A stretch of DNA of 63,820 nucleotides, the filler included, from Octopus bimaculoides (Eukaryota), in NCBI RefSeq assembly GCF_001194135.2. It is 5 parts of 4 records of this genome, joined end to end, with 100 filler letters (N's around TTAATTAATTAA, not from the genome) between each part and the next. Parts side by side here need not be neighbours in the genome. Positions count along the whole stretch, not along the records: positions 30,316 to 44,946 come from NC_068991.1; 4 more parts are not named here. One strand, given 5' to 3'. The notes below the pieces were generated by a model. It was not told the origin of the DNA, did not search any database, and worked only from the letters and a program-made list of their open reading frames with translations. Of the stretch, positions 35,213-35,541 are shown piece after piece (the first letter of the stretch is position 1; each line of letters opens with the position of its first letter). The position numbers and the translations under genes were made by a program.

Positions 35213-35221
35213 ATATCCTTT
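35213..35221 (+). promoter_or_regulatory. Minor-spliceosome (U12-type, AT-AC class) 5' splice site
   Basis: GCACTG|ATATCCTTT is a perfect match to the U12 donor consensus, in phase 0 after ...DGSMAL. Drosophila pros and vertebrate PROX1 have an AT-AC intron at the equivalent position (established knowledge). Confidence 0.88.
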
Positions 35222-35541
35222 GAACTTCACTAAACAAAATTATTCCAGGTATTTTTTTCTTCATTTCAGATTTATGTTTGATATATTTCTTAAATTTCAA
35301 AAAAAAAAAAAAATGCTTGCCAATTTTGTTGTTTTCATTGCAGTATCCTGTTCTTTTCTTTTAATTAACTCTCTTTATTACAAAATGATGGTCAGTGGTT
35401 ACCATTCAATGATTATGTGGTATATTATTGTGTGTGTATATAAATATATATATACATATATACATATATATGTACACATGTACGCATTTTGTGCAATATC
35501 TGTTTATATTTTTATATACATATGTAAGAAAAAAATAACTT

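What the first reader, a model, noticed from the sequence alone, without database searches (positions are those of the whole stretch)
35213..35269. Candidate prospero 'twintron' in a cephalopod: U12 donor, in-frame stop, U2 donor and acceptor-like site packed into 57 nt
Seen: the exon ends at CTG|ATATCCTTT (perfect U12 AT-AC donor, phase 0). The unspliced frame continues ISFELH to TAA (35231-35233). CAG|GTATTT, a plausible U2 donor, lies 36 nt downstream (35249), followed by TTTTTTTCTTCATTTCAG, an acceptor-like tract ending at 35269. Established: Drosophila pros has a GT-AG intron nested inside this AT-AC intron, and spliceosome choice changes the homeodomain N-terminus; vertebrate PROX1 keeps the AT-AC intron. 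Inference: here the major-spliceosome choice would fall after a stop codon. It would give a homeodomain-less or NMD-targeted product instead of a longer protein, so minor-versus-major competition could act as an on/off switch for a neural fate regulator.
Basis: partly seen in the sequence, partly recalled or inferred. Interest (0 to 1): 0.8.

Follow-up and report, generated by a model that had tools for sequence, protein, structure and literature searches.

The report
Octopus prospero minor-intron donor, twintron unproven
The site is the start of the ancient minor-spliceosome (AT-AC) intron of an octopus prospero gene, a known conserved feature; the nested major-spliceosome intron proposed next to it fails the fly twintron's frame test and cannot be shown from sequence alone.

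Summary
All four motifs sit at the stated coordinates. The large exon (33042-35212, start ATG 33044) is the prospero/PROX orthologue of an Octopus species. It is 97% identical in protein to O. vulgaris.

ATATCCTTT at 35213 is a genuine, orthologous U12-type AT-AC donor in phase 0. The same motif ends this exon in every relative sampled. Matched unspliced/spliced mollusc proteins show the junction is used. Complete orthologous introns in Lottia and a metagenome relative carry a U12 branch site and end in AC.

A Drosophila-type twintron is not supported. The GT at 35249 is weak (2.1 of 8.6 bits) and about 8-9% likely by chance. It lies in phase 0 behind an in-frame TAA, whereas the one arthropod-type GT read at DNA level (L014) is in phase 2 with the frame open. 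The pyrimidine-AG tract ends 21 nt after that GT, so it cannot be its acceptor. Nothing beyond ATATCCTT is conserved in a second cephalopod, although a real acceptor of the same gene is.

Two points remain open:
- The first 66 intron bases are identical in O. vulgaris.
- Donor-like GTs recur near this donor in other lineages (suggestive only).

An Octopus-specific cryptic or unproductive site therefore stays possible. Only RNA data can decide. The intron's 3' end lies outside the piece.

The parts
33022..33041 (+). [quoted passage not shown]
   Evidence: One search gives the sequence. One search shows TAACATCTGTCAC.TCTCTT..TTTCAG|GAATGA conserved in O. vulgaris and in the second cephalopod (L015).
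33042..35212 (+). Large coding exon of the prospero/PROX orthologue (ATG at 33044, 723 codons), ending ...SSETDGSMAL in phase 0
   Evidence: Searches give the ORF. Searches give homologues, including HPD (PF05044) proteins. P0132 from O. vulgaris is 97% identical. Searches place the exon end at the orthologous position.
35213..35221 (+). U12-type AT-AC 5' splice site, ATATCCTTT
   Evidence: The same motif ends this exon in all sampled loci. The second cephalopod has ATATCCTTG, and L011/L012 have the GT form GTATCCTTT.
35231..35233 (+). In-frame TAA reached if the donor is not used (read-through ISFELH*)
   Evidence: The O. vulgaris model P0132 has the same tail. The position of the first stop varies among lineages. 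The chance of a stop before +36 is 0.31.
35246..35254 (+). U2-type donor-like motif CAG|GTATTT (GT at 35249, +36, phase 0); use unproven
   Evidence: score and chance; identical in O. vulgaris; absent at this place in the second cephalopod, which has ACA|GTAAGA at +27.
35252..35269 (+). Pyrimidine tract ending in CAG (acceptor-like); too close to the GT to be its acceptor; possibly a U-rich element just downstream of the GT
   Evidence: 2 such sites in 8.6 kb. (conserved in O. vulgaris, but conservation stops 9 nt after the AG). (not conserved in the second cephalopod).
35213..35278 (+). First 66 intron bases, identical between the window and O. vulgaris; part of a 247-nt identical run that starts at 35030
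   Evidence: Identity is 85-89% in neighbouring non-coding DNA and 97.9% in the exon.
35213..44946 (+). 5' part (more than 9.7 kb) of the U12 intron: microsatellites, four N gaps and a transposon fragment; no homeodomain exon, so the branch site and 3' end are outside the piece
   Evidence: tblastn (no HPD exon). (none within 10 kb in O. vulgaris either). (N runs). (mariner HTH_48 at 43305-43481, minus strand).

Best explanation
Position 35213 is the 5' splice site of the ancient AT-AC, U12-dependent intron of prospero/PROX in an Octopus species. U11 snRNP would recognise ATATCCTTT. The intron runs more than 9.7 kb to a branch site and AC terminus outside the piece. Splicing would join ...GSMAL to the homeodomain exon, which in relatives begins T/S-S/D-T-L-T-P-M-H-L-R-K.

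The TAA is simply the first stop in intron sequence. The CAG|GTATTT and the pyrimidine-AG tract are not parts of a fly-type twintron. They are most likely incidental, or at most a cryptic or regulatory feature restricted to Octopus. Any use of them would give a transcript with a premature stop, the same outcome as retention of the intron.

Shown: identity of the gene, orthology and conservation of the donor, use of the junction in other molluscs, and the closed frame. Inferred: use of the junction in Octopus itself, and little or no use of the GT.
For: - Gene identity: homologues with the HPD domain, and a 97% match to O. vulgaris.
- Donor: ATATCCTTT ends the exon at the same codon position in every sampled AT-AC relative locus. 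Two variants exist: ATATCCTTG in the second cephalopod, and GTATCCTTT in L011/L012.
- Junction use: pairs P0152/P0006, P0150/P0135, P0148/P0134 (Gigantopelta) and P0151,154,157/P0137,138 differ exactly by ...|ISF... versus ...|TSTLTPMHLRK.
- Complete orthologous introns: L009 has gaCCTTAAC 11 nt before AC|. Lottia has tatCTTAAC 10 nt before AC|.
- Literature: this U12 intron is present in all insects and vertebrates analysed (PMC3291851, PMC2831892).
- Against a productive twintron: TAA at codon 7 and GT in phase 0. All credible lophotrochozoan spliced proteins are the short type.
- Conservation contrast: nothing beyond ATATCCTT is shared with the second cephalopod, while the real upstream 3' splice site is conserved at that distance.
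- The GT is weak and about 8-9% likely by chance.
Against: - No cephalopod transcript or spliced protein could be retrieved, so use of the AT-AC junction in Octopus is inferred.
- The 3' half of the intron is not in the piece.
- The first 66 intron bases are identical in O. vulgaris although nearby non-coding DNA differs by 11-15%. This hints at constraint on the block that holds the GT and the tract.
- The pyrimidine-AG tract is unusually strong for this intron.
- The second cephalopod also has a stop followed by a donor-like GT (ACA|GTAAGA, +27, phase 0).
- Donor-like GTs within +10..+60 are enriched over 12 lineages: Fisher p=0.0018, 0.012 without the insect-like locus, 0.054 without that locus and the window.
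Confidence: 0.7

Rival explanations
1. The GT at 35249 is a real alternative U2-type 5' splice site nested in the U12 intron. Use by the major spliceosome carries the TAA into the mRNA. The product is an NMD target or a protein without the homeodomain, so the choice of spliceosome tunes Prospero output.
For: - The motif is present and identical in O. vulgaris inside a 66-nt invariant block.
- A U-rich run follows the GT directly. Such runs can help weak donors (general knowledge, not tested here).
- The second cephalopod has an analogous stop followed by GTAAGA at +27.
- Donor-like GTs are enriched across lineages.
- Precedents exist for unproductive major/minor competition: SRSF10 and dUrp (PMC8329584, PMC3584512).
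Against: - The donor is weak (2.1 of 8.6 bits) and about 8-9% likely by chance.
- Position and sequence are not conserved between the two cephalopods, whereas a real splice site of the same gene is.
- No 3' partner is visible.
- No poly(A) signal lies within 1.2 kb.
- The enrichment loses significance once the window and the insect-like locus are removed (p=0.054).
- There is no RNA evidence.
Confidence: 0.15
2. The invariant 66-nt block is an intronic regulatory element for the U12 donor itself. Examples would be a U-rich or pyrimidine-rich binding site for TIA1-, PTB- or hnRNP-type proteins, or a U1/U2AF decoy. It would set the efficiency of minor splicing without being used as a splice site.
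For: - A 247-nt identical run spans the exon end and the first 64-66 intron bases, against 85-89% identity elsewhere.
- The pyrimidine tract is rare in this intron.
- The fly twintron is controlled by an intronic enhancer that binds hnRNP A1 homologues (PMC8329584).
Against: - This rests on one species pair. Other non-coding identical runs of 59-119 nt exist in the same alignment.
- There is no conservation in the second cephalopod.
- No stable RNA structure is predicted (z=0.72).
- No binding protein was tested.
Confidence: 0.2
3. A true Drosophila-type coding twintron: U2 splicing from 35249 gives a longer Prospero with an altered homeodomain N-terminus.
For: Only the position of the GT at +36, which falls within the +29 to +53 range seen among lineages. 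The arthropod-type locus L014 has its GT at +29.
Against: - An in-frame TAA lies 18 nt after the donor.
- The GT is in phase 0. In L014, the only arthropod-type locus read at DNA level, and in L007/L008 and L010, the GT is in phase 2 with the frame open.
- Long-form proteins were seen only in arthropods (P0013, P0030, P0142, P0143, P0145).
Confidence: 0.02

Closest known systems
U12-type AT-AC intron of prospero / PROX1 (fly pros intron 2, human PROX1 intron 4)
   Same: Same gene family, same position directly before the homeodomain, same AT-AC class. The 5' splice site is a perfect ATATCCTTT. Orthologous mollusc introns carry TCCTTAAC-like branch sites and end in AC (PMC2831892, PMC3291851).
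   Different: This is a cephalopod copy, and the intron is longer than 9.7 kb. Its 3' end and its splicing in this species were not observed here.
Drosophila prospero twintron (U2 GT-AG intron nested in the AT-AC intron; pros-L versus pros-S)
   Same: A GT lies a few tens of bases downstream of the U12 donor: +36 here, +29 in the insect-like locus L014.
   Different: In the fly both choices keep the frame, and the U2 form adds 29 residues (PMC3291851, PMC3564746). Here the frame closes after 6 codons and the GT is in another phase. The nested acceptor is unknown. No long-form protein was seen in molluscs apart from one flawed gene model (P0171).
SRSF10 nested U2-in-U12 (AT-AC) module, and the dUrp/ZRSR2 twintron
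   Same: The choice of spliceosome decides between a productive mRNA and a truncated or NMD-targeted one (PMC8329584, PMC3584512).
   Different: SRSF10 uses an included exon with its own poly(A) site and autoregulation. Here no poly(A) signal lies within 1.2 kb, there is no defined alternative exon, and no RNA evidence exists.
Cryptic U2-type 5' splice sites next to U12 donors (routes of U12-to-U2 conversion; sites activated when minor splicing is impaired)
   Same: A weak GT close to a U12 donor with no coding role. Reviews describe conversion by activation of a nearby cryptic U2 site (PMC3584512, PMC3291851).
   Different: Activation has not been shown here.

Membership tests
U12-type (AT-AC) spliceosomal intron | 5' splice site matching /ATATCCTT(T) at the exon end | tested here: met
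   ATATCCTTT at 35213-35221 in phase 0.
U12-type (AT-AC) spliceosomal intron | Branch site TCCTTAAC-like, 10-15 nt before a 3' terminal AC | not testable with these tools
   No homeodomain exon up to 44946, nor within 10 kb in O. vulgaris. The feature is met in orthologous introns of L009 and Lottia L021.
U12-type (AT-AC) spliceosomal intron | Orthologous position to the known pros/PROX1 U12 intron | tested here: met
   The exon end aligns with ...|ISF read-through tails and ...|TSTLTPMHLRK spliced forms of relatives.
U12-type (AT-AC) spliceosomal intron | Junction seen in RNA of this species | not testable with these tools
   No cephalopod transcript or spliced protein was retrievable. The junction is seen only in other molluscs.
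prospero-type twintron (Drosophila) | U2-type GT 5' splice site nested downstream of the U12 donor | tested here: inconclusive
   CAG|GTATTT lies at +36 but is weak and 8-9% likely by chance. It is conserved only in O. vulgaris.
prospero-type twintron (Drosophila) | U2-type AG acceptor nested upstream of the U12 3' end | not testable with these tools
   The 3' end is outside the piece. The AG at 35269 is 21 nt from the GT and cannot serve as its acceptor.
prospero-type twintron (Drosophila) | Both splice choices keep the reading frame, and the U2 form adds residues before the homeodomain | tested here: not met
   TAA at 35231-35233 precedes the GT, and the GT is in phase 0. In the arthropod-type locus L014 the GT is in phase 2 with the frame open.
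prospero-type twintron (Drosophila) | Purine-rich intronic enhancer that controls the choice | tested here: inconclusive
   The first 100 intron bases are 45% purine with no purine-rich run. Where the fly element lies could not be checked, because the primary papers are not held.
Unproductive major/minor splice switch (SRSF10, dUrp type) | The alternative choice yields a premature stop or premature polyadenylation | tested here: inconclusive
   A premature stop would follow by sequence. No AATAAA or ATTAAA lies within 1.2 kb. Use of the site is unknown.
Unproductive major/minor splice switch (SRSF10, dUrp type) | Both isoforms detected and regulated | not testable with these tools
   No RNA data are available here.

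The most novel reading that the evidence does not exclude
Octopods carry a lineage-specific, non-coding counterpart of the arthropod prospero twintron. A U1-recognised GT with a U-rich helper tract, held in a 66-nt invariant block just inside the AT-AC intron, competes with U11. It diverts part of the pre-mRNA into a stop-containing, degraded or homeodomain-less product. Prospero dosage in neural progenitors would then depend on the balance of the two spliceosomes. More broadly, donor-like GTs at +27 to +53 in about half of the sampled protostome lineages would mean that major/minor competition at this intron is older and more widespread than the 'insects only' view.
Probability: 0.12. Interest if true: 0.65.

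Novelty: new member of a known kind. Interest (0 to 1): 0.3.

Why it matters
The confirmed part extends one of the most conserved minor introns known to cephalopods. It was previously reported as present in all insects and vertebrates examined.

It also has a practical consequence. The O. vulgaris gene model stops at the read-through codon (…GSMAL-ISFELH*) and no HPD domain is recorded for it. The most likely reason is that the AT-AC intron was not modelled. Anyone using that protein set for prospero will have a product without the homeodomain.

If the nested GT were used, it would be a rare case of spliceosome competition acting as a dosage control on a neural fate regulator, outside arthropods. 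Present evidence does not reach that.

Tried and rejected
The intron's 3' end is therefore unavailable. O. vulgaris has none within 10 kb either.
- Exact look-up of the window ORF: not on record.
- The first two protein searches gave no cephalopod. The tool appears to drop hits longer than about 1.75 times the query (maximum 474 aa for a 271-aa query, 580 aa for a 332-aa query). A full-length chimeric query then found O. vulgaris and a second cephalopod.
- The metagenome scan returned only distant relatives, at most 52% identical.
- The representatives search returned no spliced cephalopod protein. The cluster representative is the unspliced P0133.
- The look-up for Pomacea P0155 failed.
- The primary twintron papers (PMC350559, PMC2636732) are not held. 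The exact fly offsets could not be verified and are not quoted.
- RNA structure around the donor: none beyond shuffles (z=0.72).
- Rfam: no hit in the piece.
- The AG at 35269 as start of an alternative exon: rejected. Conservation with O. vulgaris ends 9 nt after it, with a 24-nt indel and a change in A-run length. No upstream donor could use it, since the AT is only 57 nt away and of the wrong class.
- Intronic polyadenylation as in SRSF10: no signal within 1.2 kb.
Its scores are relative rankings only.

Full report
**1. The observation**

Reading 34800-35700 confirms every coordinate:
- The exon ends ...GGC ACT G at 35212.
- ATATCCTTT occupies 35213-35221.
- The unspliced frame reads ISFELH and stops at TAA 35231-35233. 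This is also the end of the 729-codon ORF 33044-35233.
- CAG|GTATTT has its GT at 35249, 36 nt after the AT.
- TTTTTTTCTTCATTTCAG ends at 35269.

**2. The gene and the organism**

Pfam finds no domain in the exon product, as expected for the part of Prospero that lies before the homeo-prospero domain (HPD). Homology searches show what it is:
- The C-terminal 271 residues hit mollusc proteins, among them a transcript-derived one with PF05044 HPD (P0006).
- A full-length query finds an Octopus vulgaris protein at 97% identity (P0132).
- It also finds a second protein at 70% identity, from five sequencing runs (P0133).
- The next best hit is a gastropod at 44%.

The exon differs from O. vulgaris by 2.1% in DNA, and flanking non-coding DNA by 11-15%. 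The window therefore comes from a congener of O. vulgaris, not from O. vulgaris itself. 'Cephalopod' is correct.

The exon begins at 33042 behind a good U2-type acceptor, ctcttctttcag|GA-ATG.

**3. The U12 donor is real and orthologous**

- ATATCCTTT occurs once in the window, against 0.3 expected. Rarity alone would not carry the case. Position does.
- In thirteen AT-AC relative loci (L001-L004, L006-L010, L013, the arthropod-like L014, O. vulgaris L020 and Lottia gigantea L021) the homologous exon ends, in phase 0, with ATATCCTTT.
- There are two variants. The second cephalopod (L015-L019) has ATATCCTTG. L011/L012 have GTATCCTTT and end in AG, which is the GT-AG subtype of U12 intron.
- Many database proteins are read-throughs that end ...|ISF.... 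Four of them have transcript or annotated counterparts in which the same residues are followed by TSTLTPMHLRK: P0152/P0006, P0150/P0135, P0148/P0134 (Gigantopelta) and P0151,154,157/P0137,138. The junction is therefore used in molluscs.
- Two complete orthologous AT-AC introns have U12 branch sites at the right distance from a terminal AC. L009 has gaCCTTAAC, 11 nt before AC|, in a 1.47-kb intron. Lottia has tatCTTAAC, 10 nt before AC|, in a 7.9-kb intron.
- The literature reports this intron as one of only two minor introns present in all insects and vertebrates analysed, and lists it for fly pros and human PROX1 (PMC3291851, PMC2831892).

In the window the intron continues past 44946. No homeodomain exon lies in the piece or within 10 kb in O. 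vulgaris. The branch site and AC end could therefore not be examined.

**4. The stop codon**

In this intron's composition, 31% of random frames meet a stop within nine codons. Among lineages the first stop falls anywhere from codon 4 to beyond codon 40. It is not a conserved feature.

**5. The GT at 35249**

- CAG|GTATTT scores 2.1 bits, against 8.6 for the consensus.
- Of 588 GTs in the 8.6 kb of intron, 14 score as well. This gives P=0.09 for one within 60 nt.
- Against random 51-nt windows of the same intron p=0.075. Against local shuffles p=0.014.

*Comparison with the arthropod arrangement.* Arthropod proteins in the database show both forms at this junction:
- Short form: P0014, P0016, P0017, P0144, P0196.
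- Long form, with an insertion that begins ISF: beetle P0013, isopod P0030, and the midges P0142, P0143 and P0145.
- In the one arthropod-type locus read at DNA level (L014), the nested GT is at +29, in phase 2, with the frame open up to it.
- In Octopus the GT is in phase 0 and lies behind the TAA. A longer protein is impossible. The defining property of the fly twintron, two in-frame products (PMC3291851, PMC3564746, PMC8329584), is not met.

*Lophotrochozoan proteins.* All credible spliced lophotrochozoan proteins are the short form (P0006, P0134-P0138, P0162, P0163, P0165, P0179, P0185). The single exception is P0171, with the insertion ISFFDKTNQSNCPAH. It also skips part of the homeodomain and looks like a gene predictor forced to use GT-AG.

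**6. The acceptor-like tract**

By pyrimidine content plus YAG it is one of only two such sites in 8.6 kb, so P is about 0.014 within 60 nt. That is stronger than chance would readily give. It still cannot be the partner of the GT, because the AG is 21 nt downstream. It also cannot be an acceptor for the AT-AC donor 57 nt upstream.

Conservation with O. vulgaris stops 9 nt after the AG, at a 24-nt indel, and the following A-run changes length. It does not open a conserved exon. It may simply be a U-rich stretch just inside the intron. Whether it binds anything is unknown.

**7. Conservation**

- *Against O. vulgaris.* A 247-nt run without a single difference covers the last 183 exon bases and the first 64-66 intron bases. 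Further into the intron identity is 85-89%. This is a hint of constraint on the donor-proximal block. It comes from one species pair, however, and other non-coding identical runs of 59-119 nt exist in the same alignment.
- *Against the second cephalopod.* These are genomic contigs, since they include the upstream intron end. Nothing after ATATCCTT aligns. The real acceptor upstream of the same exon is almost perfectly conserved at that distance: TAACATCTGTCAC.TCTCTT..TTTCAG|GAATGA.
- In fairness, that species also has an early stop (ISLRAVK*) followed by a donor-like ACA|GTAAGA at +27 in phase 0.

**8. A wider pattern, suggestive only**

I took the best donor score within +10..+60 of the U12 donor in twelve lineages.
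- Six have a plausible GT: Octopus +36, second cephalopod +27, L001 +43, L007/L008 +35, L010 +53 (GTGAGT) and arthropod-like L014 +29.
- Six have none.
- Fisher's combination of shuffle p-values gives 0.0018. It gives 0.012 without the arthropod-like locus, and 0.054 without that locus and the window.
- In L007/L008 and L010 the frame is open and the GT is in phase 2, as in the arthropod-like locus L014. However, P0185, which looks like a relative of L010 by its sequence next to the junction, shows the short junction.

I record this as an open lead, not a result.

**9. Other checks**

- No RNA structure beyond shuffles around the donor (z=0.72).
- No Rfam family in the piece.
- No poly(A) signal within 1.2 kb of the donor. 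There is a genomic A15 run at 35299-35313 that could mislead oligo-dT-based libraries.

**10. Verdict**

The finding correctly spots the conserved minor-spliceosome donor of an octopus prospero gene. This is a new member of a well-known kind. The 'twintron' label is not earned:
- The fly-type feature was tested and not met.
- The acceptor-like site cannot function as proposed.
- The GT is weak and restricted to Octopus.

An unproductive or regulatory role for the invariant 66-nt block remains possible. Only junction-level RNA data, a wider octopod alignment or a minigene can decide.

Noticed in passing
L020 10001-12157 (O. vulgaris OX597824.1, GCA_951406725.2); protein P0132: The O. vulgaris gene model for prospero is a single-exon product that ends ...GSMAL-ISFELH*. 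It reads through the AT-AC donor to the intron stop and no HPD domain is recorded for it. The most likely cause is that the AT-AC intron was not modelled.
   Followed up: partly
L011 4389 and 8672; L012 5717; tails of P0007, P0156, P0170, P0178, P0180: Some lineages carry GTATCCTTT instead of ATATCCTTT at this donor (read-through tail VSF...). In L011 the intron ends tTCTTGAC...AG. This is a switch from the AT-AC to the GT-AG subtype of U12 intron at the same position.
   Followed up: partly
P0030 (Armadillidium nasatum), P0013 (Gonioctena), P0142/P0145 (Clunio), P0143 (Culicoides): Long-form proteins carry an insertion that begins ISF between the U12 donor position and SSTLTPMHLRK. One is from an isopod crustacean, so the twintron-type product may not be limited to insects as stated in PMC3291851. 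These may be gene predictions and were not checked against RNA.
   Followed up: no
L007 2542+35, L008 2658+35, L010 3116+53: Non-arthropod relatives have a GT in phase 2 with the frame open from the U12 donor to the GT (G|GTATGA; GGG|GTGAGT overlapping the stop). This is the geometry of the arthropod-type locus L014. The 3' ends are not available.
   Followed up: partly
P0171: A mollusc-like protein has a 15-residue insertion (ISFFDKTNQSNCPAH) at the junction. The model also lacks part of the homeodomain. It is probably a predictor avoiding the AT-AC intron.
   Followed up: no
P0011 tail ...DGIQPS-LSFSNEQYLQ: An arthropod-like read-through begins LSF rather than ISF. The first base of the U12 donor may be changed in that lineage. 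The DNA was not fetched.
   Followed up: no
window 43305-43481 (-): A fragment of a mariner/Mos1-type transposase N-terminus (Pfam HTH_48, E=1.1e-11) lies inside the intron.
   Followed up: partly
window about 33533-33643 (+): A long asparagine run (AAC/AAT repeats) in the exon differs in length from O. vulgaris. It probably accounts for most of the 33 gap columns in the exon alignment.
   Followed up: no
window 35299-35313 (+): A genomic A15 run lies 87 nt inside the intron. It is a likely source of internal oligo-dT priming artefacts in cDNA data for this gene. O. vulgaris has CCC+A11 here.
   Followed up: no
window 37325-37477, 39308-39408, 42064-42660, 44134-44403: Four runs of N (assembly gaps) are flanked by TA/CA/GA microsatellites. 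The intron is only partly assembled.
   Followed up: no
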